DNA from: Octopus sinensis
Lineage: Eukaryota
Direction of reading: 5' to 3'
DNA length: 64,000 bases
Assembly (NCBI RefSeq): GCF_006345805.1
Contig: NC_043006.1
Location: 10,602,001-10,666,000, forward strand
In this document: piece by piece, positions 7,790-56,309 of the stretch
Numbering within the stretch: the first letter of the stretch is position 1
Layout of the letters: every line of letters starts with the position of its first letter
The notes under the pieces: generated by a model
What the model was told of the DNA's origin: nothing
Databases searched by the model: none
The model's input: only the letters and a program-made list of their open reading frames with translations
Position numbers and translations under genes: made by a program

Positions 7790-7825
7790 ACGTACGTACG
7801 TACGTATATGTATAGTATATATATG

Positions 7826-7912
<87 letters not shown>

Positions 7913-8064
7913 GTATATATATATGTGTGTGTGTGCATATATATGTATGTACATGTATATATATATATATATTATATATATATATATATATAGATATATA
8001 TATATATATATGTATATATATGTATATAATATATATATATATATATATAGATATGTATATATAG

Positions 8065-8095
<31 letters not shown>

Positions 8096-8117
8096 GTATA
8101 TATATATTATCTATATA

Positions 8118-8162
<45 letters not shown>

Positions 8163-8209
8163 TATATATATGTATATATATATATATTATGTATATATAT
8201 GTATATATC

Positions 8210-8244
<35 letters not shown>

Positions 8245-8264
8245 GTATATATACTATATATATG

Positions 8265-8297
<33 letters not shown>

Positions 8298-8328
8298 GTA
8301 TATATATATATATATATGTATATATATG

Positions 8329-8359
<31 letters not shown>

Positions 8360-8388
8360 GTATATATATATATATATGTATATATATG

Positions 8389-8421
<33 letters not shown>

Positions 8422-8573
8422 GTATATATATATATATATGTATATATATGTATTATATAGATATATATATATGTATATATATGTATATATATTATATATA
8501 TATATGTATATATGTATATATTATATATATAATATGTATATGATATATATCTATATATATATGTATATGTATA

Positions 8574-8622
<49 letters not shown>

Positions 8623-8781
8623 ATATATATATGTATATATATGTATATATGTATATATATATATGTAATATATATATGATATATATATATATATATGTAT
8701 ATATATGTATATATATGTTATATATATATGTATATATATATATGTTATATATATATGTATATATATAATATGTATATATAG

Positions 8782-8835
<54 letters not shown>
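7790..8835. repeat. ~1-kb interrupted (TA)n/(TATATG)n microsatellite
   Basis: Directly visible; source of the YI-repeat ORFs. Confidence 0.95.
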
Positions 8836-8837
<2 letters not shown>

Positions 8838-9143
8838 ATTATATAAAAGGGCTTAGTAAAATAAATACTTTGCCACATACTGAACTCATTAGAAATAGTA
8901 GCTAAAAAAACTTTTCTAAACTATTTCTAATACTTAAAGAAATAACCTTCTCAAATAACCTTTGCATTTGATTTTTTAATGTCTTTACCCCCATACTTTC
9001 GTGAGTTGAGTTGAGCAAACACTATTTGAGAGAGATTTTCTTTAAGTATTAGAAATAGTTTTAAAAAAGTTTTTTTAGCTACTATTTCTAATGAGTTCAT
9101 TATGTGGCAAAGTAATTTATTTTACTAAGCCCTTTTATATAAT
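8838..9143. mobile_element. Foldback/MITE-like element with ~105-bp inverted arms
   Basis: 8838-8942 (attatataaaagggcttagtaaaa...cttaaagaaa) is the reverse complement of 9037-9143; loop about 95 bp. Confidence 0.75.
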
Positions 9144-15029: not shown

Positions 15030-15257
15030 TCTCTTTTAATTCTTTTACCTTTTACTTGACTCCGTCAAACAGCAGCGGTGCTGCTAAGTCACCTTGAAGT
15101 GTTTAGTAGAATAAATCAACCCAAAACATATTTTCCAGTCTGGTACTTATTCTACCGAGCTCCTTAACTGAAATGCTAATTTATAGAGATATGAACGAAT
15201 TAACACCGGATGTCAAGTAGTGGTGGTGGACAAATACGAACACAGACGCACACACAA

Positions 15258-15294
<37 letters not shown>

Positions 15295-15440
15295 ATATGT
15301 GTTGTGTGTGTGTGTGTGTGTGTGTGTGTATGCATACATATGTGTATATATATATATATACATATATATATATACACATGTATATATATATATATGTGTA
15401 TATATATATATATATGTATATATAATATATATATATATAT

Positions 15441-15494
<54 letters not shown>

Positions 15495-15805
15495 CATATG
15501 TGTATATATATACATATATATATATATATACATGTGTATGTATATATATTTACATATATAAATACATATATATATATATATGCATACATATATATATATA
15601 TATACACATGTATTCATATACATGTATATACATATATATATACATACATACATAAATATATACATACATACACTCATGGTTCAACGTTCCATCCCACTGC
15701 ATGACACCTTGGTAAGGTGTCCTGTATTGTAGTCTCGGACTGACCAGAGACCTGTGAAAGAATTTGATCGTAGCAAACTGAAAGAATCCTATCCTATATG
15801 CATAT
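15030..15805. mobile_element. Old SINE family B pieces (tail on - at 15030-15245, head on + at 15680-15805) around a (TA)n tract
   Basis: Degenerate similarity to the family B tail (tcttttacttg...ggtacttattct...ggacaaa) and head (catggttc...cccactgcatgacaccttgg). Confidence 0.6.
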
Positions 15806-15812
15806 ATATAAG

Positions 15813-15846
<34 letters not shown>

Positions 15847-16010
15847 TGTATGTATGTATATTTATGTATGTATGTTTATGTATATGTATGTATGTATACA
15901 TGTATGTATGTATGTATGTATGTATGTATGTATATATTTAGGTATGTATGTTTATGTATATGTATGTATACATGTATGTATGTATGTATGTATGTATGTA
16001 TGTATGTATA
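15800..16010. repeat. (TATG)n microsatellite
   Basis: Directly visible. Confidence 0.95.
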
Positions 16011-18833: not shown

Positions 18834-20356
18834 TAATCCATGACTACTTTTTACTCTGCTACATTATATTTCTTTATTTGTATATCTCTTTGGTTGTATA
18901 AAGCTAACTTCCGCTTCATATTCTATACCGTCAATTATTTTGCTAAAATTTATTGTTCGTTTCTTAATAATGGCTGCTTACAACGATCTCCGCCATGTTA
19001 AGTATATTCATATACCTCAACTACAACGTGAATATTTTACCACAACTATACACTTAGAGAATTTAGCAATATTTTATGAATACTAAATTGCATGCCGTGT
19101 TTCGTTTGATGAAAGAGAAGCCAAATACCATTGATGGTATTTAGTAGTTAAGCCAAAATGAGAATCCGTTAATTATCAACGATATTTTTGGATTTCTTTT
19201 TGTCGATTTCCATATAATAACAGAGGTAGAGAAATACAACCGATCTTTAATGAACCCTGAACTCAGAATCAATATCGTATTATTTCCAATGCAGGAAGGA
19301 TCGTTGAAACGTGACTATCGTCCCACAAGATACATTGTATCAATCTGTTATTTAATTCAGATGTAGACGCCATATTTCTAAAAACGAAACTAAAAAAAAA
19401 TATTTCCAGCACAACTCCGATTGAGAGTTGAGAAAATATTAAGAAAAATATTAGTTTTCCTAGATTACTATCGTATATCTATTAATTCGTGCTCTTTTCA
19501 TATGTAAATGGGTGTAAGTGATTTTTACTTATTAGTAGAAATAAAGCTGCTTGTTTTTCCTCTGTATATATGGATTTCTAGACACATACGTACATTCGTA
19601 ACTATATGTTTCATTACTAATGCGTGTGATCTGATGGTTTTCGTGTGCGTTGTGTGTGCTGAGGGATGGTTGTTATTAAAAGAGAGCAGGGGAAATAGTG
19701 TGGCTTACATATTACTGTAAGCACAAGTATATTCTCTCTAACAGACGAAAGAGATTATAAGCCGACCTTTAGCTACATACACCGTGACTGCGTTTTGGTT
19801 TTTATAGTCTATTTATTGACTGTCAGATGACAATCGAGTTGCGATCGCTAGAGAGTCGACGCCATTGTAAGTCTTTATTAAACAAACCTGAAATCTTCAA
19901 TTATCTGAGGATTAAGACAGTTAAGGATACGAATGAAATCTTGCTATTTCTTTTGTCATCTTACTTCTGGCTTCTTCTCTATCGTAAATTGGGGATTAGC
20001 TGTACATTGGAAGTTTGTATTTGGCCTAGAGTACCACACTGCAACATTTGCTGGTGAAGAGTGTCGGTGAGAAGAAAATGAAAATAAAGCTTTCGACACG
20101 TAAGAAGCATACTTAATGCATTGATTAATAGTATATATTGATCTGCAGAATTAACCGAAACACGTATACACAACTTAAAGAAGACAAGAAATAAAAACAA
20201 AATTAAAGCCTATCAGGAGACAAAAGCAATACAATTACATTCTCAGAAATACAATTTAAATATGTACGCACCGACAAATGAATCCATGTCCATATAAAAG
20301 TCATAAACTATAATAAATGAGTAAAACAACAAAATATATCGATAATAAAAATAATG

Positions 20357-20557
20357 AAGATGATGATGATGATGACGACGACGACGATGATGGTGGTGGC
20401 GGTGATGATGAGGATGAGGATGATGATGATCAAAGTGGTGGTGGTGGTGGTGGTGGTGGTGGTGACTCCAACGACGATAATGATGATGATGATGATATGA
20501 TGATTTTGATGATGATGGTGATGGTGGCGGTGATGATGTGAATAGTGGTGATGATGG

Positions 20558-20592
<35 letters not shown>

Positions 20593-20839
20593 GTGAAGAT
20601 GATAGCGGTGGTGGTGGTGATGGTGGTTGTGGTGGTGTTGGTGGTGGAGGAGTTGGTGGTGGTGGTGGAGGTGGTGGTGGTAGTGGTGGAGGTGGTCGTG
20701 GTGGTGGTCGTGGTGGAGGTGGTCGTGGTGGTGGTGGTGGTAGTGACGTCGACGATGATAATGATGATGATGATGATGACGACGACGACGATGACGACAA
20801 CAACATCATCATCATTATCATCATCATCATCATCTCATC

Positions 20840-20872
<33 letters not shown>
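20357..20872. repeat. Compound trinucleotide microsatellite (GAT/GAC/GGT/CAT/AAT)
   Basis: Directly visible; gives spurious poly-D/G/P/H ORFs in all frames. Confidence 0.95.
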
Positions 20873-21283
20873 GCAACAGTACCAACATGACAATTCGCTC
20901 ATACGATTCCAATATTAAGCCGGAGACCAGAAGATATATGCGATTTCATCTTACATTTAAGTACGTCTAATCTCTTTCTTTTCCTAGAAAATGTTTAAGG
21001 AGATTGTTTTGATTTTTAAAATCAATTTTCACTTGTTTATTTTTGGGCGGGTTTTTTTTGCATACATTGATATATAATCTTTGAATTTTTCTTGTTCTTC
21101 TTGATGTTGCTGCTCTTGTTGTTGTTCTTGATATGGTATGGGTTCAGAATTAATTTAATATTGGGTTGCTCTATAGTGCTTCTGAGAGAGTTAGCTAGAA
21201 TTCCATTTATCTTTATTAACATTTGAATTTATTTTCATCGTACGTGATAAAAAATAAATGTTTACGATGTATACATACGTAAA

Positions 21284-21449: not shown

Positions 21450-21935
21450 TATATATATATATAAAACTTACTTGGAAGAAGACAACGACGCGTGCGTTCG
21501 ATCATATAATAACAATTTCATAAATAAAACATATGCATACATACCTACATCTATATGTATATATACATGCATGTTTATTTGTGGTGTCCTGTACTCATAT
21601 ATGCATGTATATATACATATAGATGTAGGTATTTACATATATGAATGTATGTATGCATATGTTTTATTTATTAAATTGTTATTATATATATATAACAAAA
21701 AATATCTAAACATATGCATATATACATACATATATGTACGTACCTAAATCTATATGTATATATACATGCATATATAGGTACAGGACACAAAAAAAATGTT
21801 GATTACAATGAGAAGAGAAAACATAAAAACAAAAACATGGAAACGGACTTTTTTTTCGAACAACGAAAAAACAGAGTACAAGACATACAACACAAGGAAT
21901 ATTCCCCGTCTTCAGTTGTCCCTGTTTCTGCTACG
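21450..21935. mobile_element. Older copy of the repeat family at 59926-60895
   Basis: Shares acctacatctatatgtatatatacatgcat and gtacaggacac...aaaaacagagtacaagac...acaaggaa...cagttgtccct with the 60-kb element. Confidence 0.65.
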
Positions 21936-22377
21936 TGACCATACTTGATTGGGGCCTTGAAAACACTTAGTCGTACAAATCGACCCTAACGCTTCTATTT
22001 TTAAACCTGGTAGTCGTAATATATGAAAATCATTTGACAAACAGTTGGGTAACTGGAACGTAAATTCCATTTTGTGAACCGTGGTGAGGGACACATGCAA
22101 ACACAAAGATACACGCACAAACACAAAAATAGATAGAGACAGAGAGAAAGAGAGTCAGCGGTCTTCTTTCAGTTTTGGTGAACTACATCCACTCACAAAG
22201 TTTTGGTAGGACCCAGAATATAGAAGAAGAGTGGGCGACTGGGCGACAGCTACCCAAAGTGTCATGCAGTGAGAATGAATCCGAAATCACGTGGTCGCAA
22301 AGCAAAATTCTTACCACAAAACTACGCACACTCACACACATGCATATATATATATATATCTATATATCTTTTTTTTT

Positions 22378-22598
22378 TTATTGCCCACAAGGGGCTAAAC
22401 ATAGAGGGGACAAACAAGGACAGACAAACGGATTAAGTCAATTACATCAACCCCAGTGCGTAACTGGTACTTTATTTATCGACCCCGAAAGGATGAAAGG
22501 CAAAGTCGACCTCAGCGGAATTTGAACTCACAACGTAACAGACGAAATACGGCTACGCATTTCGCCCGGCCTGCTAACGTTTCTGCCAGCTTGCCGCC
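22378..22598 (-). mobile_element. SINE family A, full length
   Basis: ttattgcccacaaggggctaaac...gccagcttgccgcc. Confidence 0.9.
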
Positions 22599-22602
22599 TT
22601 AA

Positions 22603-23940
22603 GAGCGTAAGCTCTGCTTACAGCTCATTACGCATTTTATTTAGTTGGCTAACATTTCTGTCAGTTAACCGCTTTTGGTGGCAAGGCATTTATTCAGACT
22701 CTGTGACCATCGTTTAGCTACCTACGAAAAAAAAATGCGAATTTCATACGTGAAATTTCATATTTAATTAGAAAACTTTCTTCTTTTCTGGAAAGCGAAA
22801 TCGAAAAAATAGTGGCAATGCAGACAGTCCACACTGAAAAGATGAAATTATATCAGGGAATCATGAATAAATCTCTCAAAATTAATTCACACAGTTATAT
22901 GAAAGTCTTGTCTTTGTATGCATTCATGAGAGTATGGTCATGTTTCAGTATATTATTTCTCATGAATAAATCTGTATCCTATACTCTTACATACTTCGTC
23001 AGTTACAAGCGGTTTACATATAATATTTGACTCACTGAAAGTTTTGGTCCACTATAGTCTTATAATGACAAAGTAAAAATGAAAAGAGAGAAGGGAAATA
23101 ACACAATTGGCCACATAAACCACTGGTTTCGATATGGGTGATATCCTGAATACCATACGGATTTTGTGTTTTGATATTTTCCGAGGATTTTCCCGAATTT
23201 GCCGGAACGTATTATGAATGAATATGTTTGCCATTCTTTTGGTTTTGACTCTTCTCCATGCACACGAAAAATTATTGCATTAAAAGATACCTCTTTATAA
23301 AAATAAAATTGTTACCGCACGGAATTTTTTTATTTGTTTCTCCAGCACACGGGAAAATCCTCGGAAAATATCAAAACACAAAATCCGTATGGTATTCAGG
23401 ATATCACCCATATCGAAACCAGTGGTTTATGGGGCCAATTGTGTTATTTCCCTTCTCTCTTTTCATTTTTACTTTGTCATTATAAGACTATAGTGGACCA
23501 AAACTTTCAGTGAGTCAAATTTTATATGTAAACCGCTTGTAACTGACGAAGTATGTAAGAATATATGATATAGATTTATTCATGAGAAATAATATACTGA
23601 AACATGACCATACTCTCATGAATGCATACAAAGACAAGACTTTTATATAACTGTGTGAATTAATTTTGAGAGATTTATTCATGATTCCCTGAAATAATTT
23701 CATCTTTTCAGTGTGGACTGCCTGCATTGCCACTATTTTTTCGATTTCGCTTTCCAGAAAAGAAGAAAGTTTTCTAAGTAAATGTGAAATTTCACGTATG
23801 AAATTCGCATTTTTTTCGTAGGTAGCTAAACGATGGTCACAGAGTCTGAAGAAATGCCTTGCCGCCAAAAGCGGTTAACTGACAGGAATGTAAGCCAACT
23901 AAACATAATGCGTAATGAGCTGTAAGCAGAGCTTACGCTC
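22603..23940. mobile_element. Non-autonomous foldback DNA transposon, ~590-bp TIRs, TTAA TSD (Kolobok-like)
   Basis: 22603-23195 and 23350-23940 are reverse complements with few mismatches; TTAA at 22599-22602 and 23941-23944; termini GAGCG...CGCTC (5'-RR...YY-3'). Confidence 0.85.
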
Positions 23941-25128
23941 TTAATTCTTTCATTTGGCGAGGTCTACGTTACTTTTCATCCTTTTGGGGTCGATGAATAC
24001 ATCAAACAATGGGGTGGATGTTATTGAGTAGTCGTCTCTCTCCAAAATTTCAGACCTGGTGATTATAATAGAAAGGGTTATTATTAAAGTAGTGAATCAG
24101 CAGAATCGTTAACTCGGGTGACAAATCTATTTGCGGTTTGTCTCCTAGCTTTATGTTATGAGTTCAAATGCTGCCAAAGTCAACAATCCGATCATTTTTC
24201 GGTGTCAATAAAATAAGTACCAGTTTAGCTCTAACGTTTCTCCTTCCACTGCCGGCGGTCTAAGTAGATGCTTAATAAAGTACAGTGGGATGAAAGGTAT
24301 TAATTTTCTTTCTGAAATTCATGATTAGCATCTCTTTTACCGGCGATGAGGAAGTCCTGTCATTGTAAAAGTTACGAATAGTGTTAGACAACTGAAATTA
24401 ATTAAACTGTACATTCGAGATTCTTTTTAGTAGAGGATTAAATGAGTCGTTTGGCGCTTTTTCTGTGGTCCTCACAAATTTATTATTTGATTAATACGTA
24501 AAGGACTTTCTCCCATGCTATTCCTAAGAGATACGTAGACTTTAACACATCGACCTGTAGCATTAGGCCAGCGAGAATGTTGACGCCTCCCAGCCGACCA
24601 CATATGCAGACTTTTTTTTTTCTTCTGGTAACGAGCTGTTCTTCTACACTTTCAACTTCAAACCACGTTTGTGAGCCTCATTTTATCATGGCCCGGTCAA
24701 ACACTAGCCATTTCAACCAGTAATTAACAGAGGGATTCCTCTGGAATTCCATCATACTGAATAGTTTCCCTGCTATTAAAACCGACTACGGTTTAATGAG
24801 AGCATTCGGTAGAAAGAATTCGGTAATATTGCAGGACCAGCGAAGATCGGGGATATGGCAGATTCAGCCACAGCAATCTAATAAATATACATTAAAATCA
24901 ATATCTCTGAATTTACAACAGATCACTCTATGTATAACATATTTCCCAGGGTAAGAATAACGTAAGTATATGTTTTATTGCGTTTTTTTGTTGGGGTTTT
25001 TGTATACATTTTATTTTTGTGAATTGCGTATCTAAGGTAATGAAACATGATTTTACATATATCTATATTTATATATATATAAATATATATATACATAAAT
25101 ATATATATATATATAAATATATATATAC

Positions 25129-25179
<51 letters not shown>

Positions 25180-25349
25180 ACAAAATAAATGTTTGCATGC
25201 ATTTAACAAGCTTATCTATATTGTATGACAATTATATAAATAAGCATATCTACATATCTATACGAATACAAAAAACATATATTCATACATATAATTATAT
25301 ATATATACACACATGTACATATACATATACGTATATATATATATATATG

Positions 25350-25390
<41 letters not shown>

Positions 25391-25887
25391 ATATATATAT
25401 ATATATATACATAGATACATACATACATACACGCACGCATACATATATATATATATATATACAATGTATGTAACTGAACAAAGGATTCGAAGGAATATGC
25501 ATTACATTCATGTTTCTATTCAAATATTTCTCCCATAATATCACGTTGAATTTGTCTATGTATACGTTTGCGTGTATCTCTCTGGTGTATATGTACGTGC
25601 TTTTTGTGCGTATATGTTCAGCTAAGTATATAGATAGTTAATTATATAAAGCTCTACACACACACACACACATATATATACATATATTATATATAATATA
25701 TAATATATATATATATTATATATATATATATATACAAACGCGTCTATATATGTGTACACTCATGTATATTATATATAATATAGTGAGATATAGATATATC
25801 GATATACATAAATTTATGCATATATATATACCCACAAGCACGCATGCACACACGCACATACACACACACTTATATACATACATACAC

Positions 25888-25941
<54 letters not shown>

Positions 25942-26770
25942 GTATGTATTAATATATACACAGGCTATTTTAATTTTTCTTGTATGTGTACGTCTCTTTA
26001 TCAGGTTTTAGTCACGCGAAATTCCCATTCTTGAACAGTACCAAAGTAAATGTTACTCCGTATTCAGCATAGCCTCACCTTCTCATTCCAAATCCGCTTC
26101 TTCAGTAAAGTGTTGATTTATATATCTTCCATTATTTATTCTTTTCTTAGTAATTTCTTTTAGAATTTTTTTCACCCAATTCCCTGTGACGAAATACTTA
26201 GGTTTCGCTATTTATTCACAAAGAGTTGGAGAAATTTCTCTGTTAACTTCACGTTTTTATCGTTGTTCCATAGTTTACGGCTATTCAAAATATTTAAATT
26301 TCGTTACTTTCTTACTTTCACTTGTTATAATTTTGAATAGAGAACCGATAAAAAAAAATTGTTCTCGTTTCATAAATTTCTTTTTCCTTATAATAACAAT
26401 CGGATTCATAATGTTGATATATTATTTATTTATTTAGGTGCCTGAAAGCAAACACCCATACACGCACACACTCACATACATGCAATACATACACACACAT
26501 ACAGAAGATCACACACACACACATACACAGACACACTTGTATATTTGTGTACGTGTGTGAGTAGGCCTGCGCATGTGTGTGTATGTTTAAATAGAAAGAT
26601 ATACGTGTATATATATATCGACATAGGTATATAATCATAAGCCTGTACATACATACACACATACACACACACATATATACAAACATACAGAGAGACGCGT
26701 ATAAGTGCGTGTATAAATGAATAGGCATACGTACATAATTATATGTATGTACTGTACGTATGTATGTAAA

Positions 26771-26806
<36 letters not shown>

Positions 26807-27315
26807 GTGTGTATATGTATATATATATATATATATGTGTATATATATATATATAATATATGTATATAGCCATGTATATATATATATATATATATGTATA
26901 TAGCCATGTATACATACATATATATGCGTGTGTATGTGTATACAGAGATTTTGGATATATAGATTATGGGAAGTGGAAGAGATAGACAAATTGTACAACT
27001 GCGCATGGGAGGGAGAAAGTCCAATAGCGAAAGTGAAAGTTATATAACATACACTATGTATTGATTGCACCATTCACGACGATTAATGCTGTGGAAGAGT
27101 ATTTCCGACTAACTCGTACAATCATAGTTGCGCCTATACCCTTGCATACGTATATATGGTTTACAGGTGTATTTGAGTTTCTTAGTATATGCGTATATAG
27201 AGATGACACATATATATATATGCACAAAGATACACAAGAACATATGTATGATAGCTGAGTTCAAAATACAATGTAAATCATATGTGCGTGTGTGTATATA
27301 ATTATACATACACAC

Positions 27316-35567: not shown

Positions 35568-36587
35568 GTTACGTTTATGAATTTGATTTGCAAGATTCTT
35601 GATGTGAAATCGTGTATTGAAGTAAATATTGTTTCATTTCGGGATGGTAATCGTTTTTTGTGAGGTAAACACGTACACTAAATTTTCGTTTTTCACTCGT
35701 TTACTATTGTTCTTATCTTATGTCCAGTGTATCCCTAAACAGAGAATCGACTAAACAGAACAGGAGGAGACACGTAGGATGGAAAAGTCACTGAAGGGGT
35801 CACAGATGTGTGATGAAAGATTTCTAGGTAAAGACCATAAGGTAAAATAAGAAGAATAACAAAAGAGCGAAGAACGAATATATAGTGCGTAATGTTTATT
35901 TTGCAGGAAAAATTATGACCATCCCGAAATGTAACAAAATAGTGGGAAGATTTTTCACAAATGAAGATAATTAGACAGCTTTTGTTATGCAGTCCGATGT
36001 ATTGAACTGACGTACATGTATCACAAAGGATGTTGGTTGATAACGAGTTCCAACATTTGTAGCTAAATTTCAGAGCTCTGGGTGAGTGTCATATGTACTG
36101 AGTGGAGGTGTGAGGTGCGATGATGTTTTTTGTGATATGAGTAATAATTTCATGTTCATGGAAGCTAAGATGCTCCTAGATGCGTTGCCAGTAATATACT
36201 TAATAATTTAATAACTTAAGTTAACACGACCATAGTTTGTACGTAAAGGGCTTCTTTCTGAAATTTGAGACAGTCACTACCTCCTTGTAACGAAGCTCAT
36301 GGGGAAATCTAAATCGTCTAGTATTCTAAGGTGAACTGGTCTGATTATTCTATTGACTTTTTTTACGAATAATTTTTATTTCACACCCGTTTCTGTTGTA
36401 TATAATTTCCCGTCTACTGTCACTATATAATTCTATATTAACTTCCTCTGCTGCGTTATTTTGCATGTTAAGAATATAAAGATCGGAAAGGTTTACAGTT
36501 TCATCAACATCTTTACTCAGCCAGTGGAAATTTTCTTGAAATACCGGATTGGTATTTTCTTGAAATTTTCTTGAAATTTTCTTGAAA

Positions 36588-36820
36588 GGCGGTGAGCTGG
36601 CAGAAACGTTAGCGCGCCGGGCGAAATGCTTAGCCGTATTTCGTCTGTCGTTACGTTGTGAGTTCAAATTCCGCCGAGGTCAACTTTGCCTTTCATCCTT
36701 TCGGGTTCGATAAATTAAGTACCAGTTACGCACTGGGGTCGATGTAATCGACTTAATACCTATGTCTGTCCTTGTTTGTCCCCTCTAAGTTTAGCCCCTT
36801 GTGGGTAATAAAGAAATAGG
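36588..36820 (+). mobile_element. SINE family A, full length with 14-bp TSD
   Basis: TSD aaattttcttgaaa at 36574-36587 and 36821-36834. Confidence 0.95.
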
Positions 36821-37754
36821 AAATTTTCTTGAAATAACAGCGTTGTTTTGACGTTTATAATCATATAAATTTCGTGGAGCGCAGAATATTTCAATGGTTA
36901 TCGAACGAGGCAATGACTTTTTATATAGTTACTCGACAGCTTACAAACGGCAGTCAATTTCCCTTAAGCAGCCCTCCATAAAAAAAGCAGCTAAACACAT
37001 GAAAAATAATTTAAATAATTTAAATCGTAGATTTCCCTGAAATCATAGGATGGTTACTTCTGAAAGCATTTTGAACATAGATCTATGTGATTGCTGTGAT
37101 TCTGCTCCTAAACAACATCAAAAGCAACAATGGTTATTTTACATTACAAGTAGCATTACTCGCAATATTAGTATATCTTAATATCAAATGATCAAAAACC
37201 ATTTTAACATTTTTATGAAGTTCTTTTAGATATTCTAAAATATTAAAATGATTTCTGTGATGTCACAAATATTGTTACGATCTATACACAGTAATGCAGG
37301 GTTGACATTTGTATTATAAAGCGATGGCGGTCATTAATTTTTTTGTGTTTTTTTACTTTAATGTTGATTCAGAATTTAATATATCATTTCTATGCATTTG
37401 CTCTGGTTCCTACCGCACATTAAACGAAACACTCTGCATATTTGAAATTATCTTCTGCTTCTTCTTTTCTCATAATATTTATTTTGTTGCACCCTTCGTT
37501 TGAACTTCCACAATCTCACTTCATTATTGGTCAGCTGTAAATATAGGTATGTACGTGTCAATTAAAGGAATTCACAATTCTGAAATTATTTGCTTTTTGA
37601 TTGTCAGTGATTATGTGAAACAAGGAGGAAAAAAAAAAATAATAATAAATTAGGTGAATTTATTTGCAACTCAAATTCAAACCGATATCTCTCCCTCACA
37701 GCCAATCAGATTCATAATACAGACAAGCACTCACACGCACAGATATATACACAG

Positions 37755-39551: not shown

Positions 39552-39603
39552 GAAACAAATATTAATAATGTCAAGTAAAGCGCCCATCTGGCAGAATTGT
39601 TAC

Positions 39604-39836
39604 CTATTTCTTTATTACCCACAAGGGGCTAAACACAGAGGGGACAAACAAGGACAGACATAGGTATTAAGTCGATTACATCGACCCCAGTGCGTAACTG
39701 GTACTTAATTTATCGACCCCGAAAGGATGAAAGGCAAAGTCGACCTCGGCGGAATTTGAACTCAGAACGTAACGGCAGACGAAATACGGCAACGTATTTC
39801 GCCCGGCGTGCTAACGTTTCTGCCAACTCGCCGCCT
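39604..39836 (-). mobile_element. SINE family A with 17-bp TSD, inserted in the head of an older family A copy
   Basis: TSD tctggcagaattgttac at 39587-39603 and 39837-39853; the older + copy continues to about 39960 (ctgagttcgaatgcc...tcatcctttcgggttcgat). Confidence 0.9.
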
Positions 39837-40304
39837 TCTGGCAGAATTGTTACTGTGTAGGTCAAAATATTTTAGCGGCATTGCTTCCAACTTTACGTTC
39901 TGAGTTCGAATGCCGTCGGGATCAACATTGTCTTTCATCCTTTCGGGTTCGATTTAGCTGGCCTTGTACTCAAATTGCAAACAAGTATTTTAATGTAAAA
40001 TAATGAAAGTGTTTGAAACTTGAGATAATCCGATTGCTCCGCCATAAATGAGTACAACTAATGGCTGGGATCGTAATAGAACAAGTTAGAGCCTGGTGAG
40101 AAACATTCATTTATTCTCAGTGATTTAAACAACGGTGTACTGTGACTCATACAATATGAGTTTCAAGGAATTATTCAGTGAAAGTATCATGGAATGTGTT
40201 CTCAGTCAGTAAAACATTGATCTCTAGTAACTGTAACTCAAGAATCTAAGGAACAATGAAATAGGCATAAATTCAAGGAAAGGCATTTTCTGAAAACATA
40301 TACT

Positions 40305-41623: not shown

Positions 41624-42708
41624 GTTTCTTTATTAGCCACACAGGGCTGCAAACAGACAGGACAAATTACAAGGTAGAGCTTTTCTTTTGGGGATAAAAA
41701 AGGGGGTTTGGTTTTCGATCAAAAGGGATCGTAAAAGGAAAGAAAGAGGAAAAAAAAAGGGGGGGGATAAAAAAAGGGAAAAGGAAAAAAAAAACGATCA
41801 ATAGGATCGTTATCACAGAAATGTCAATATAAAGTGTAAAGGGGAGGACAGGTGAGGTTTAACCGTGGAAAGAAAAGCCTATGGAAAAGACCACGGTAAC
41901 CTCGGTCTTTTTTTTTTTTTTTTTTTTTTTTGCAAATAAGCAACTCTCTGTTTTCGATTTCTGGGTTCATAGGACTATGCTCAAGGTGGCTTCGTCATTC
42001 ATACGTGCCATTCTTGCTACATTCACCCATCTTTTTTTAAAACATTCGCTAGACAAAACTTGCCTCTCTACTCTCACTTTCCTTTTCAAGTGGTACTTGA
42101 AGAAGTTGATGAGAGATTGACCAGAGAGGAAAGTGTTTGTCTCCAATCCTTTCAGACGCGTCCACCAGATACATTCTTTCGCCATAGCCACAAGGATGAT
42201 GAAAATAGCTCTTCCTTCCGTTTGAAGGAAGGAGGCGTGACAATATTGACGATAGACTCAGCTGATAAACCGACTCGTCCCACACGTGACAGCAGTTGTT
42301 CGACATAAGCCCACAGGTCGGAAATTGTTGGACACTGAACGAGTGCGTGCAGAACGGTTTCGTCGCTCTGACCGCATCTCGGGCAGGTCGGCCCCGTGTT
42401 TCTCGAGCCGTGTCTGTAGAGCTTATCCCGAACGGGTAGCGCTTCTCGGTAGCACTGCCAGGCCAGGGATCTCTGGAAGTTGTCCATGGGCCCTGGCCCG
42501 AAAGTCGTCCCGAACAGGCGGGTCAGGTACTCCTCGTCGACGTTCAGGTTCGCCCCGAGCTCGTCGTCGTACCTCCCCTCCACTAAACCCCTATAGAATG
42601 CTTTGGTTGTGTTGAAGTCACTTAAGGTCGACCCAGGACGGCAGAGTTGCTTGAGAGCAACGCGACACTCGCGGTGCCATTCGCCCTTCCTCGGCCTCTT
42701 TTTGATCC

Positions 42709-42709
<1 letters not shown>
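41624..42709 (-). mobile_element. Tx1-like LINE copy U2 (ORF2 C-terminus 41967-42709 plus 3' UTR)
   Basis: AWQCYREALPVRDKL...CPRCGQSDETVLHALVQCP..LW is a zf-RVT-type zinc motif; AKECIWWTR and FKKRW follow; stop TGA at 41967-41969; one frameshift near 42220. Confidence 0.9.
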
Positions 42710-42762
<53 letters not shown>

Positions 42763-42786
42763 ATAGATAGAAAAATAGATAGATAA

Positions 42787-43082
42787 GTTTCTTTATTGGC
42801 CACACAGGGCTGCACACAGATGGGACAAGTACAAGGTAGAGCTTTTCTTTTGGGGGATGAAAAAAAGGGGGTGGCGTAGGTTTCCGATCAAGAGGGATCG
42901 TAAAAGTGAAGAAACAAAAAAAAAAAGAAAAAGAAAAAAAATGAAAAAATAAATAGAATAAAAAATAAAAAGAATAAAAGAAAAAAAGAAGGGAAAAGGA
43001 ACAAAAGAAAGAGAAATGAAAAAAGAAGAAAAAGGGGAAAAAAAGGGAAGAGGAAAAAAAAAGAACGATCAATAGGGATCGT
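42787..43082 (-). mobile_element. Tx1-like LINE copy U3 (duplicate of U1 including junctions)
   Basis: Same 3' flank (gatagaaaaatagatagataag) and same 5' junction (gggatcgtgtagatagataggtagg) as U1. Confidence 0.85.
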
Positions 43083-43728: not shown

Positions 43729-44955
43729 GTTTCTTTATTAGCCAGACAGGGCTGCACACAGATAGAACAAATTACAAGGTAGAGTTTTTCTTTTGAAGGT
43801 AAAAAAAAAAAGGGGGTGTTCGATCAAAAGGGATCGTAAAAGGAGAGAAAGAGGACAAAAAAAAAAGGTGGGTTAAAAAAAAAGGGGGAGAGGAAAAAAA
43901 ATTGATCAATAGGGATCGTTATCACAGAAATGTCAATATGAAGTGTAAGGGGAGGACAGGTGAGGTTTACCCCGTGAAAGAAAAGCCTACGGAAAAGACC
44001 ACGGTAACCTCGGTCAATGAAGTCACATGTTATATTTCTTTCTTTTATTTATTTTTTTTTGCAAATAAGCAACTCTCTGTATTAATTTTTATGGTTCATA
44101 GAATCATAGTCAAGGTGGCTTCGTCATTCATACGTGCCATCCTTGCTACATTCACCCATCTTTTTTTAAAACATTCACTAGACAAAACTTGCCTCTACTC
44201 TACTTCTCACTTCCTCCTCAAGTGATACTTGAAGAAGTTGATGAGATATGACCGAGAGGAAAGTGTTTGTCTCTAATCCTTTCAGGCGCGTCCACCATAT
44301 CATTCTTTCGCCATACCAACAAGTATGATAAAAATAGCTCTTCCTTCCCGTTTGAAGGAAGGAGGCGTGACGATATTAACGATAGACTCAGCTGATAAAC
44401 CGACACGTCCCACACGTGACAGCAGTCGTTCGACATAAGCCCACAGGTGGGAAATTGCTGGGCACTGCACGATTGCGTGCAGAGCGGTTTCGTCGCTCTG
44501 CCCGCATCTCGGGCAGGTCGGCCCCGTGTTTCTCGGGCCATGCCTATAGAGCTTATCCCGAACGGGTAGCGCTTCTCGGTAGCACCGCCAGGCCAGGTAT
44601 CTCTGGAAGTTGTCCATAGGTCCCGGGCCGAAAGTCGTTTGAAACAGGTGGGTCAGGTATTCCTCGTCGACGCCCAGGTTTGCCCCGAGCTCGTCGTCGT
44701 ACCTCCACTCCACTAATCCCCTATAGAATGCTTTGGTTGTGTTGAAGTCACACAAGGTCGACCCGGGACGGCAGAGTTGCTTGAGAGCAACGCGACACTC
44801 GCGGTGCCATTCGCCCTTCCTCGGCCTCTTTTTGATCACGACTGCAGTTCGGTCATGGAGACAAGTTGCGGGAATGCGTGCCTCACAACGGCGACCACAC
44901 CTGTTCACCGTCGTCTACATAGAGCCGAGATGTCGCAGTCTCAGCGTGTCTGCGC

Positions 44956-45681: not shown

Positions 45682-46962
45682 GTTTCTTATTAGCCACACA
45701 GGGCTGCACACAGATAGAACAAATTACAAGGTAGAGCTTTTCTTTTGAAGGTATTAAAAAAAAAAAAAAAAAAAGGAAGGGGGAGGTTCGATCAAAAGGA
45801 TCGTAAAAGGAGAGAAAGAGAAAGACAAAATAAGGGGGTTAAAAAAAAAAAAAAAAGGGGGGGGAGAGGAAAAAAAAAAATATCAATAGGGATCGTTATC
45901 TACACAGAATGTCAATATGAAGTGTAAAGGGAGGACAGGTGAGGTTTACCCGTGGAAAGAAAAGCCTGCGGAAAAGACCACGGTAACCTCGGTCAATGAA
46001 GTCAATTTTAGTTTATATTTCTTTTTTTTTTTTTTTTTTTTTGGCAAATAAGCAACTCTCTGTTTTCGATTTCTGGTTCATAGGACTATGCTCAAGGTGG
46101 CTTCGTCATTCATACGTGCCATTCTTGCTACATTCACCCATCTTTTTTTAAAACATTCGCTAGACAAAACTTGCCTCTCTACTCTCACTTTCCTTTTCAA
46201 GTGGTACTTGAAGAAGTTGATGAGAGATTGACCAGAGAGGAAAGTGTTTGTCTCCAATCCTTCAGACGCGTCCACCAGATACATTCTTTCGCCATAGCCA
46301 CAAGGATGATGAAAATAGCTCTTCCTTCCCGTTTGAAGGAAGGAGGCGTGACAATATTGACGATAGACTCAGCTGATAACCGACTCGTCCCAAACGTGAC
46401 AGCAGTGGTTCGACATAAGCCCACAGGTCGGAAATTGTTGGACACTGAACGAGTGCGTGCAGAACGGTTTCGTCGCTCTGACCGCATCTCGGGCAGGTCG
46501 GACCCTTGTTTCTCGAGCCGTGTCGTAGAGCTTATCCCGAACGGGTAGCGCTTCTCGGTAGCACTGCCAGGCCAGGGATCTCTGGAAGTTGTCCATGGGC
46601 CTGGCCCGAAAGTCGTCCCGAAAGGCGGGTCAGGTACTCCTCGTCGACGTCCAGGTTCGCCCCGAGCTCGTCGTCGTACCTCCCCTCCACTAACCCCTAT
46701 AGAATGCTTTGGTTGTGTTGAAGTCACTTAAGGTCGAACCCAGGACGGCAGAGTTGCTTGAGAGCAACGCGACACTCGCGGTGCCATTCGCCCTTCCTCG
46801 GCCTCTTTTTGATCCACGACTGCAGTTCGGTCATGGGACGAGCTGCGGGAAACGTGCCCACAAACGGCGACCACACCTGTTCACCGTCGTCTACATAGAG
46901 CCAGAGATGTCGCAGTCTCAGCGCGTGTCTGCGCATCATCAACCACGGCCATGCCCAGCCAT
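45682..46962 (-). mobile_element. Tx1-like LINE copy U6 (longest copy; many 1-bp indels)
   Basis: Collinear with U2 and U5; ORF end identical to the U2 variant (NDEATLSIVL*); 5' junction cagccat|agatag. Confidence 0.9.
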
Positions 46963-53831: not shown

Positions 53832-54599
53832 TACATTATATATATATGTATATACATATATTATATGCATATGCATGTATACATGTAAATATACACACGC
53901 ACGCGCACACATACTTATGAATCATACATTGATTTATAGAAAAGGAAAGGCAATTTTTTGACAAGTTGACGACCCCTTGTGCTTTATATCCTATCACTTG
54001 ACGCGTCCCACTTTTCGTCTTCTGGGAGCGACTTGTTATTTGTGTGTGTGTATGTGTGTGTGTTTGTAGGTATTGTGTGTGTGTGTGTTCTCTTGGAATA
54101 GATTTACAATTTCGAGTGTTTTTATTTTTTTTTTTTACCTAATTTTTTCGGTAACTTGAAAGAAATATAGCATTGCATCGAAAAATTGATTTGTTGGTTA
54201 ACATTTTATGACAATCTATAATTCATGAAGTTTTATGAAAATGAAACATCGATAGAAGCATATATGGCCGCTGTTATAAAGAAGAGAGGCAGCGACACAT
54301 TTAGTCAACCAACAGTTTCCATTGAAGTCTTCTCCCTTTGCTCATTCTATAAATACGCGAGGTAGAATGACTAACTAACAATTTCTACGCTAAAAGTTTT
54401 ATATTTTATGTTTCATTCTACTCCCTCAATATGACACAGAGGAAAAAGTAATTTGTATAAGTCTCTAATAATGATGGCCAGTGCATAAATAGATTTATAT
54501 TGATTTCTAACCTAACCAGATGGCCGAGATTTTGATGAGCGATGCTATTGGGAATATGTTGATATGAGTCTATTTTTCCGTTTTTCTGTCTTCTATACC

Positions 54600-54830
54600 T
54601 ATTTATTTACTACCCACAAGGGGCTAAACACAGAGAGGATAAGCAAGGACAGACAAACGGATTAAGTCGATTATATCGACCCCACTGCGTAACTGGTACT
54701 TATTTAATCGACCCCGAAAGGATGAAAGGCAAAGTCGACCACGGCGGAATTTGAACTCAGAACGTAACGGCCGACGAAATACCGCTAAGCATTTCGCCCG
54801 GCGTGCTAACGTTTGTGCCACCTCTCCGCC
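54600..54830 (-). mobile_element. SINE family A with 13-bp TSD (1 mismatch)
   Basis: tgtcttctatacc at 54587-54599 and tgtgttctatacc at 54831-54843. Confidence 0.9.
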
Positions 54831-55016: not shown

Positions 55017-55237
55017 CCTGGCAGAATCGTTAGCAAGTCGGGCGAAATGCTAAGCGGTATTTCGTCCGGCGCTACGTTCTGAGTTCAAATTCCGCCGAGG
55101 TCGACTTTGCCTTTCGTCCTTTCGGAGTCGATTAAATAAGTACCAGTTACGCACTGGGGTCGATGTAATCGATTTAATCCGTTTGTCTGTCCTTATTTGT
55201 CCCCTCTATGTTTAGCCCCTTGTGGGCAATAAAGAAG
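55017..55237 (+). mobile_element. SINE family A
   Basis: ctggcagaatcgttagc...gtgggcaataaagaag. Confidence 0.9.
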
Positions 55238-55621
55238 TAAGTAGAAGAACTTAATTGCATCCTGTTAAACCACTCAATCAGAGGTTCTCCTGATCTTTAG
55301 TGTTCTTTATGTGTCAAGGCAAAATAAACATATATTCTTGATTTCATTCAGGAGGAAAAGATGACCTTCCGCATCGATGAGATTCGGGTGACGCATTTTC
55401 TTCTTGGGCATGGGAAACGATGTTCAGTGGCGGAGGAAATGAAAAATAGGTGGATGTCACAAGATGGAAAAAGTGGATGTGATGAAAAATGGAAAAACGA
55501 GTGTCACAAGGAAATGAAGGAAAGTGTAAACCTACACCACACACACAGATACGCACCCATACATACACATGCACACAGACACGCGCAGACATATATATAT
55601 AATATATATAATATATATATA

Positions 55622-55801: not shown

Positions 55802-56309
55802 TCTATATATATAAAACGGTAGTTGTGTGAGTGTCTGTCCCCTTCGATTTAGATTCCTAACTACTCCCACATTTTGCGGAGCAGTTTAACCAAATTCGGG
55901 TATCTTATAGTCGTGATTCATATCGAGCCCGTCTGAGTATTAACGCGCGTCTACGATGAGTCAACGATTTTTAAAATAATTTAACATCATTTTTTATTCC
56001 ATTTTAATGCATAATTTTTCGTGTGTCGATGGCGGCGGAGTTGGCGTCCATGGTCACACCTGCACCTGTTTGCTTCTCCCCTTCTTCCCTCCCTCGTGAA
56101 GCTGTGGGGAAGGATTGTAAGGAAATCAACGTCGTAAAGTGTTGTCAAGGAGACAGCGTTCTTTTAGAACAACGACTTCATGGCTTGAAGACACCAAAAC
56201 AGAAATGGCTAAGAAAGCCCGATTGGCATCTATAAGGGAAGTACTCTCTAAAAATGCTTATATAGTTATTTCCCTTACAAAACCGAGCAACGCCGGGCGA
56301 TACTGCTAG
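55802..56309 (+). mobile_element. Non-autonomous Helitron
   Basis: Starts TC (tctatatatataaaa) after A55801, ends CTAG before T56310, has a subterminal GC hairpin ccgagcaacgccggg, and no TSD. Confidence 0.85.

What the first reader, a model, noticed from the sequence alone, without database searches (positions are those of the whole stretch)
22599..23944. 1.34-kb near-perfect palindrome: TTAA-flanked foldback element with ~590-bp arms
Seen: the arms 22603-23195 and 23350-23940 differ at few positions, the spacer is 154 bp, the TSD is TTAA, the termini are GA...TC, and it sits at the exact 5' end of a family A SINE. Established: a TTAA TSD with 5'-RR termini fits Kolobok (piggyBac usually starts CC); long hairpin RNAs are ADAR and Dicer substrates, and coleoid cephalopods edit RNA heavily. 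Inference: a young non-autonomous Kolobok-like family with unusually long TIRs. If transcribed it gives ~590 bp of dsRNA, and as DNA it is cruciform-prone.
Basis: partly seen in the sequence, partly recalled or inferred. Interest (0 to 1): 0.7.

Follow-up and report, generated by a model that had tools for sequence, protein, structure and literature searches.

The report
Single-copy TTAA-bounded 1.3-kb hairpin element
A real 1.35-kb near-perfect inverted repeat bounded by TTAA lies next to a SINE in an octopod genome. It is most likely an ordinary non-coding foldback-type DNA transposon copy, but one copy cannot prove that or show which transposon family it belongs to.

Summary
The arms are 22599-23195 and 23350-23944, 597 and 595 nt including TTAA. 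They differ by 16 substitutions and one 2-nt indel (97.0% identity). The spacer is 154 nt and unstructured. TTAA sits at both ends, the termini are GA...TC, and the element abuts the consensus 5' end of a minus-strand tRNA-derived SINE.

- TTAA is itself a palindrome. From one copy it cannot be told apart from the last 4 nt of the repeat, and a TA duplication fits equally well.
- There is no second copy in the 64-kb window, and no other TTAA-flanked TIR element or transposase there.
- No cephalopod genome could be reached. Two searches with the element's ORF translations against the public protein clusters, one exhaustive representative search and four DNA-pattern scans all found nothing.
- The Kolobok call rests on two terminal letters.
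- The arms do not code for protein, and they lack the internal tandem repeats of classical Foldback/Galileo elements.

A new detail: the outermost 24 nt of each arm form their own 10-bp hairpin.

Best reading (about 0.55): a non-autonomous cut-and-paste transposon copy. Main rival (about 0.3): a one-off local inverted duplication. An assembly artefact is unlikely. The predicted dsRNA is real but unremarkable here, because inverted SINE pairs occur in the same window.

The parts
22599..22602 (.). Left TTAA. It is either a putative target-site duplication or the last 4 nt of the inverted repeat.
   Evidence: TTAA occurs at 0.0064 per position in the window.
22603..23195 (+). Left arm, 593 nt, starting GAGCG.
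   Evidence: 97.0% complementary to the right arm.
22603..22626 (+). Nested terminal hairpin GAGCGTAAGC-TCT-GCTTACAGCTC: a 10-bp stem with one bulge.
   Evidence: DNA dG -7.2 kcal/mol, z -3.7, and 0 of 200 shuffles fold as well.
23196..23349 (.). Unique AT-rich spacer (loop), 154 nt, with no structure of its own.
   Evidence: z +0.26. Only a ~30-nt partial match elsewhere, at 56002-56025.
23350..23940 (-). Right arm, 591 nt, ending CGCTC. It carries a 119-codon open frame that is not under selection.
   Evidence: No homologues or domains.
23917..23940 (+). Mirror copy of the nested terminal hairpin (GAGCTGTAAGC-AGA-GCTTACGCTC).
   Evidence: symmetric to 22603-22626.
23941..23944 (.). Right TTAA.
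22370..22598 (-). Flanking tRNA-derived SINE copy. It is context, not part of the element. Its 5' end GGCGGCAAG... abuts the left TTAA, and its A11 tail plus a TA microsatellite lie at 22344-22380.
   Evidence: 88-92% identical to four full-length and one 3'-truncated copy in the window. Four of them share the same end point.
23958..24027 (+). Old, 5'-truncated SINE-related fragment on the other flank, head-to-head with the upstream SINE. It is context only.
   Evidence: I7, 85% over 41 nt; 74% over 76 nt.

Best explanation
This is one copy of a non-coding, non-autonomous cut-and-paste DNA transposon with a foldback shape. One end region of a parent element (~590 bp) was duplicated in inverted orientation around a 154-nt loop. 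The result was then moved in trans by a DDE transposase that recognises the terminal few dozen bases, including the terminal 24-nt hairpin or palindromic site. It inserted into a TTAA (or TA) at the junction between a SINE 5' end and its flank, duplicating the target.

The predicted empty site is ...CAGCTTGCCGCC-TTAA-TTCTTTCATTTGG...

Shown: the structure, the boundaries, the lack of coding capacity and the hairpin folding. Inferred: mobility, target duplication, the source of the transposase and any superfamily label. A TTAA-specific family with purine termini (Kolobok-like) is the best guess and is weakly held.
For: 1. The inverted repeat ends on both sides exactly at TTAA. TTAA occupies only 0.64% of positions in this window, so a random repeat boundary would rarely fall there. 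TTAA-specific (or TA-specific) transposons produce this pattern every time.
2. The termini GA...TC satisfy the published Kolobok rule of 5'-RR/YY-3' with a TTAA duplication (PMC9587614). Xenopus Kolobok copies show TTAA followed by AG-type termini, one of them AGAGCAAG... (PMC6004289).
3. The outermost 38 nt, counting TTAA, are identical in both arms and contain a significant nested hairpin. This is the kind of conserved, structured terminus expected of a transposase site.
4. The element is an insertion-like block between two unrelated, older repeats. The flanking SINE is 88-92% identical to its relatives, while the arms are 97% identical to each other.
5. Nothing in it codes for protein. There are no homologues or domains. 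Of the 9 arm-to-arm differences inside the longest open frame, 8 change the amino acid.
6. Palindromic transposons that form dsRNA on their own are a known class (PMC5625713).
Against: - There is only one copy in 64 kb, with no diverged relatives by BLASTN or nhmmer.
- The window has no other TTAA-flanked TIR element and no transposase.
- TTAA is palindromic, so it cannot be shown to be a duplication.
- No empty site could be obtained.
- At 1.34 kb with ~595-bp TIRs it is atypical for Kolobok or piggyBac derivatives.
- The arms lack the tandem sub-repeats of classical Foldback/Galileo TIRs.
- Lying exactly at a SINE boundary is a coincidence under this model too.
Confidence: 0.55

Rival explanations
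1. A one-off local inverted duplication that is not a mobile element. A broken or stalled DNA end folded back, copied about 595 nt of its own neighbouring sequence in reverse, then rejoined. The TTAA at the end is coincidence or junction microhomology.
For: - The element is single-copy within all sequence available.
- No related sequence was found in any searchable collection.
- No transposase is nearby.
- An arm-spacer-arm layout with a unique, unstructured spacer is what fold-back priming produces.
Against: - The repeat would have to stop by chance at a TTAA (0.64% of positions) and also at a SINE boundary.
- The nested terminal hairpin at the exact tip has no role in this model.
- The external null results say little, because the collections contain almost no cephalopod DNA. 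Only 10 hits were found even for a LINE domain.
Confidence: 0.3
2. An assembly or library foldback artefact: a chimeric palindromic long read, or an amplification chimera, that was built into the contig.
For: Palindromic chimeras are a known failure of long-read and amplified libraries (my own knowledge). No reads are available here to check.
Against: - The palindrome lies inside the contig, with different and ordinary flanks on each side.
- It has a 154-nt unique spacer rather than a direct junction or adapter.
- The arms differ by 16 substitutions against a single homopolymer indel. That looks like evolutionary divergence, not read error.
Confidence: 0.05
3. Two separate copies of a ~593-nt repeat that inserted head-to-head 154 nt apart.
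For: Inverted pairs of independent SINE copies do occur in this window: 54596-54820/55019-55243 and 36586-36823/39600-39837.
Against: - No third copy of the unit is present in 64 kb.
- The inner ends (…TTTTCCCG|AATTTG and CAGCACA|CGGGAAAA) have no TTAA or other duplication, and they do not mirror the outer terminus.
- Both units would have to be complete to the same nucleotide.
Confidence: 0.03
4. A rolling-circle (Helitron2/Helentron-like) or other hairpin-ended element that makes no target duplication. The boundaries would read T|TAAGAG...CTCTTAA|T, meaning insertion between two T's.
For: Both ends carry terminal hairpins. Helitron2 elements are defined by hairpins at both ends plus short asymmetric terminal inverted repeats (PMC3627910).
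Against: - A ~595-bp full-length inverted repeat is not a Helitron feature.
- There are no 5'-TC or CTRR-3' ends.
- No Rep/helicase gene is present.
- The terminal symmetry is complete, not asymmetric.
Confidence: 0.03

Closest known systems
Kolobok superfamily non-autonomous elements (for example Xenopus T2-MITEs)
   Same: TTAA on both sides and purine-purine / pyrimidine-pyrimidine termini (GA...TC). The element is non-coding. The superfamily is reported in molluscs (PMC9587614; PMC6004289).
   Different: The TIRs are ~595 bp rather than tens of bp, and the total length is 1.34 kb. The terminus is GA, not the AG/AGGRR seen in the Xenopus families. No family, transposase partner or proven duplication was found. 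No match to its terminal 10 nt (either strand) was found in the KolobokP supplementary files held as text.
Foldback-type transposons with long TIRs (Drosophila FB, Galileo of the P superfamily, Tetris)
   Same: Nearly the whole element is two long inverted arms around a short middle, so it can fold back on itself.
   Different: Those TIRs are internally repetitive tandem arrays, and their target duplications are 7-9 bp. Here the arms are unique sequence with no tandem sub-repeats, and the boundary is TTAA.
piggyBac-derived MITEs
   Same: TTAA at both boundaries.
   Different: Published accounts set piggyBac termini apart from Kolobok's RR/YY. From my own knowledge piggyBac ends are typically CCC...GGG. 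Here they are GAG...CTC.
Palindromic repeats and inverted SINE pairs as ADAR hyper-editing substrates (for example the frog Harbinger palindrome)
   Same: A self-complementary repeat that could form long dsRNA without a partner. Octopus is reported to be unusually rich in such loci (PMC5625713).
   Different: Neither transcription nor editing of this locus has been tested. At ~595 bp and 97% pairing it is longer and more perfect than the SINE pairs in the same window.

Membership tests
Kolobok | 4-bp TTAA target-site duplication | tested here: inconclusive
   TTAA is present at 22599-22602 and 23941-23944. It is palindromic and merges with the inverted repeat. There is one copy and no empty site, and a TA duplication fits equally well.
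Kolobok | Termini 5'-RR ... YY-3' | tested here: met
   GA...TC, if the boundaries are set just inside TTAA. Definition from PMC9587614.
Kolobok | Mobilised by a Kolobok DDD/E transposase encoded by an autonomous relative with the same termini | not testable with these tools
   Among the 19 window ORFs of 130 aa or more, none looks like a transposase. Only the LINE-like ORF and three of the element's own open frames were scanned against Pfam, with no transposase domain. No cephalopod genome is accessible.
Any transposon family | Multiple dispersed copies with different flanks | tested here: inconclusive
   There is no second copy in the 64-kb window. External searches were empty, but the collections hold almost no cephalopod DNA.
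piggyBac | TTAA duplication with CC(C)...(G)GG termini | tested here: not met
   The termini are GAG...CTC.
Tc1/mariner (Stowaway-like) | TA target-site duplication | tested here: inconclusive
   Reading the boundaries as T-[TA]-AGAGCG...CGCTCT-[TA]-A is symmetric and allowed. The AGAGCG terminus is not a typical Tc1/mariner end (my own knowledge).
Foldback (FB) / Galileo-type | Long TIRs built from internal tandem sub-repeats | tested here: not met
   The TIRs are long, but TRF and the short-seed repeat search find no tandem structure in the arms.
MITE | Small size (under about 800 bp), short TIRs and high copy number | tested here: not met
   The element is 1,338 bp between the TTAAs with ~595-bp TIRs. 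Copy number is unknown.
Helitron2 / Helentron | Hairpins at both ends with short asymmetric TIRs, and Rep/Hel-encoding relatives | tested here: inconclusive
   Terminal hairpins are present. However, the symmetry is complete rather than asymmetric, and no Rep/Hel is present.
hpRNA / endo-siRNA or ADAR-substrate locus | Transcribed long hairpin that yields small RNAs or A-to-G clusters | not testable with these tools
   Only the folding potential is shown. No RNA data are available.

The most novel reading that the evidence does not exclude
The element represents an undescribed cephalopod family of TTAA-bounded long-hairpin transposons. Its ends carry a nested 24-nt hairpin, which may be a distinct recognition mode. 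Its copies would act as self-contained ~600-bp dsRNA sources feeding the unusually strong ADAR hyper-editing or the small-RNA pathways of octopods.
Probability: 0.07. Interest if true: 0.5.

Novelty: new member of a known kind. Interest (0 to 1): 0.22.

Why it matters
If it is a transposon family, it adds a long-TIR, TTAA-bounded, non-autonomous element to the poorly catalogued DNA transposons of cephalopods. Each copy would be a ready-made, near-perfect ~600-bp RNA duplex, which is relevant to why octopus shows so much hyper-editing. If it is a one-off inverted duplication, it is an ordinary structural curiosity. Either way it does not change current understanding. Palindromic repeats and inverted repeat pairs are already the accepted substrates for editing, and the same window contains inverted SINE pairs.

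Tried and rejected
1. Other copies in the window. BLASTN with word size 9 and nhmmer against the window with the element masked found none. The only outside hit is a ~30-nt partial match of the spacer at 56002-56025, too short to interpret.

2. Copies elsewhere through translated ORFs. The 117-aa arm ORF, and a concatenation of the element's other open frames of 35 aa or more, were searched against 5.8 billion protein clusters with no hit. An exhaustive search of 1.84 billion representatives with the arm ORF also found nothing.

3. Exact-pattern DNA scans. The terminal 22-mer and an internal 22-mer were scanned in metagenome contigs. The terminal motif was also scanned in viral contigs and in bacterial/archaeal genomes. 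All returned zero.

4. Allelic or orthologous locus for an empty-site test. The window's ORFs are not on record in the contig index, so the source genome is not in that collection.

5. Rfam. Only sub-threshold miRNA-model hits on AT microsatellites, and none inside the element.

6. Pfam on the element's ORFs. Only a noise-level match.

7. KolobokP supplementary files held as text. No match to the terminal 10 nt in either strand.

8. SINE target-site duplication, to order the two insertions. No convincing duplication could be recognised, because the SINE tail runs into a TA microsatellite.

9. Scan for other TTAA-flanked TIR pairs in the window. Only sub-pairs inside this palindrome and inside the inverted SINE pairs turned up, no more than for control tetramers.

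10. The coding reading of the 119-codon open frame was rejected. There are no homologues, and the substitutions are mostly nonsynonymous.

Full report
**Observation**

- The arms are 22599-23195 and 23350-23944, 597 and 595 nt including the TTAA at each outer end.
- They differ by 16 substitutions (8 transitions, 8 transversions) and one 2-nt length difference in an A-run, which gives 97.0% identity.
- The spacer is 23196-23349, 154 nt.
- Pairing stops sharply after TTAA on the outside and at 23195/23350 on the inside.
- The termini inside TTAA are GAGCG...CGCTC.
- As RNA the 1,346 nt fold into a single hairpin of -1027 kcal/mol. The spacer alone has no structure beyond chance (z +0.26).

This is not a chance feature.

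**Context**

The upstream flank is a tRNA-derived SINE on the minus strand. Its 5' end (GGCGGCAAG..., read on the minus strand) lies at 22598.
- In those four copies the next base is T (4 of 4), and T again in 3 of 4. The first TT of the left TTAA may therefore belong to the SINE or to its preferred flank. That would make the pre-insertion site ...CCGCC-TTAA-TTCTTTC..., but four copies are too few to be sure.
- The downstream flank (23958-24027 and 24151-24225) carries older, 74-85% similar SINE-related fragments in the opposite orientation.
- I could not recognise the SINE's own target duplication, because its A-tail runs into a TA microsatellite. The order of the two events is inferred only from divergence: SINE copies are 88-92% alike, whereas the arms are 97% alike.

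The host is an octopod cephalopod. A LINE 3' fragment in the window (zf-RVT, PF13966) has its best named relative in Argonauta hians.

**What the element contains**

It contains nothing that codes for protein.
- The longest open frame is 119 codons, reading inward from the right terminus.
- That frame has no homologue among 5.8 billion clusters or 1.84 billion representatives. It has no Pfam domain above noise.
- Of the nine arm-to-arm substitutions inside it, eight change the amino acid. It has therefore not been under coding constraint since the arms diverged.
- The other open frames of 35 aa or more, searched together, also found nothing.
- The arms are unique sequence. There are no tandem sub-repeats and only trivial short repeats.
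- Rfam finds nothing in the element.

The stem is 10 bp with one bulge. As DNA its dG is -7.2 kcal/mol with z -3.7, and none of 200 shuffles fold as well. The outermost 38 nt, counting TTAA, are identical in both arms.

**Is it a transposon?**

The case for an insertion rests on the boundaries.
- The repeat ends at TTAA on both sides, and TTAA occupies only 0.64% of positions in this window.
- The termini are purine-purine, as the Kolobok definition requires (PMC9587614; Xenopus examples in PMC6004289).
- The tip is conserved and structured.
- The block sits between two unrelated, older repeats.

The case against, or more accurately the missing evidence:
- TTAA is a palindrome, so from one copy it cannot be separated from the inverted repeat itself.
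- The same bases also allow a TA duplication with termini AGAGCG...CGCTCT, or an insertion between two T's with no duplication.
- There is no second copy, close or diverged, in the window.
- There is no other TTAA-flanked TIR element in the window, and no transposase.

**Attempts to reach other copies or an empty site**

Every route available to me failed:
- translated-ORF searches;
- exact-pattern scans of metagenome, viral and prokaryotic genome collections;
- look-ups of window ORFs in the contig index.

These null results are weak evidence. The collections hold almost no cephalopod DNA: even the LINE domain found only ten relatives.

**Mechanism**

My best explanation (about 0.55) is a non-autonomous cut-and-paste element of foldback shape.
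- It arose when one end region of a parent transposon was copied in inverted orientation around a short loop.
- It was moved in trans by a transposase that binds the terminal hairpin-containing ~25-40 nt.
- It inserted at a TTAA (or TA) at the SINE/flank junction.

Within that explanation a Kolobok-like origin is the leading guess but weakly held, because it depends on two letters. piggyBac fails on its termini. Classical Foldback/Galileo fails on internal TIR structure. The MITE label fails on size.

The rivals:
- The main rival (about 0.3) is a one-off fold-back inverted duplication. It explains the single copy, but it needs the TTAA boundary and the terminal hairpin to be coincidences.
- An assembly artefact (about 0.05) is unlikely. 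The palindrome is internal, has a unique spacer, and its arms differ mostly by substitutions rather than homopolymer errors.
- Two independent head-to-head insertions and a Helitron2-like element are minor possibilities (about 0.03 each).

**Consequences**

The dsRNA prediction is sound as a folding statement. It fits the literature: octopus has an exceptionally high fraction of loci able to form long near-perfect dsRNA, and very strong hyper-editing. Palindromic repeats can be edited without a partner (PMC5625713).

It is not unusual for this genome, however. The same window holds inverted SINE pairs of 238 nt (95%) and 225 nt (89%, 198-nt spacer). Whether this locus is transcribed is unknown.

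The "cruciform-prone" remark should be softened. With a 154-nt spacer, extrusion from duplex DNA is disfavoured. Hairpin formation would be expected mainly on single-stranded DNA during replication. This is my own knowledge and was not tested.

**Verdict**

This is a real, well-delimited, non-coding 1.35-kb hairpin element. It is probably an ordinary member of a known kind (long-TIR non-autonomous DNA transposon), with family status and superfamily unproven. Interest is low to moderate. The decisive test is a simple genome-wide BLAST plus an empty-site comparison, neither of which could be run here.

Noticed in passing
window 22603-22626 and 23917-23940: The outermost 24 nt of each arm form their own 10-bp-stem hairpin (GAGCGTAAGC-TCT-GCTTACAGCTC; z -3.7, 0 of 200 shuffles fold as well). 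This is a nested palindrome at the very tip of the long inverted repeat. It could be a dimeric transposase site or a hairpin-ended transposition signal.
   Followed up: partly
window 54596-54820 / 55019-55243 and 36586-36823 / 39600-39837: Two inverted pairs of the same SINE family. The first is 225 nt, 89% complementary, with a 198-nt spacer. The second is 238 nt, 95% complementary, 2,776 nt apart. The second pair is more alike than typical copies of the family (88-92%). Both could form dsRNA if co-transcribed.
   Followed up: partly
window 42152-43072, 44300-44908, 46197-46727 (minus strand): A LINE 3' fragment with the reverse-transcriptase zinc-binding domain (zf-RVT, PF13966) recurs three times. 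The repeat period is about 2.1 kb (300 nt at 92% identity), and the copies are interleaved with an (IYLS)n-type microsatellite. This looks like a tandemly duplicated block rather than independent insertions. The best named relative is in Argonauta hians (60% identity).
   Followed up: partly
window 20243-20970: A low-complexity tract that reads as long poly-Ser/Pro/His/Tyr runs on one strand and poly-Val/Met/Thr runs on the other. It consists of trinucleotide-type repeats, not an evident gene.
   Followed up: no
window 7800-8850, 15200-16010, 25100-26950 and 21500-21800: Very long TA/CA-rich compound microsatellites, several of them self-complementary. They produce many sub-threshold Rfam miRNA-model hits (mir-297, mir-466, mir-3149), which are composition artefacts.
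   Followed up: no
window 23261-23285 versus 56002-56025: A ~30-nt stretch of the spacer (CCATGCACACGAAAAATTATTGCATTAAAA) matches a site 32 kb away on the opposite strand at about 90% identity. It is too short to tell a shared repeat fragment from chance.
   Followed up: partly
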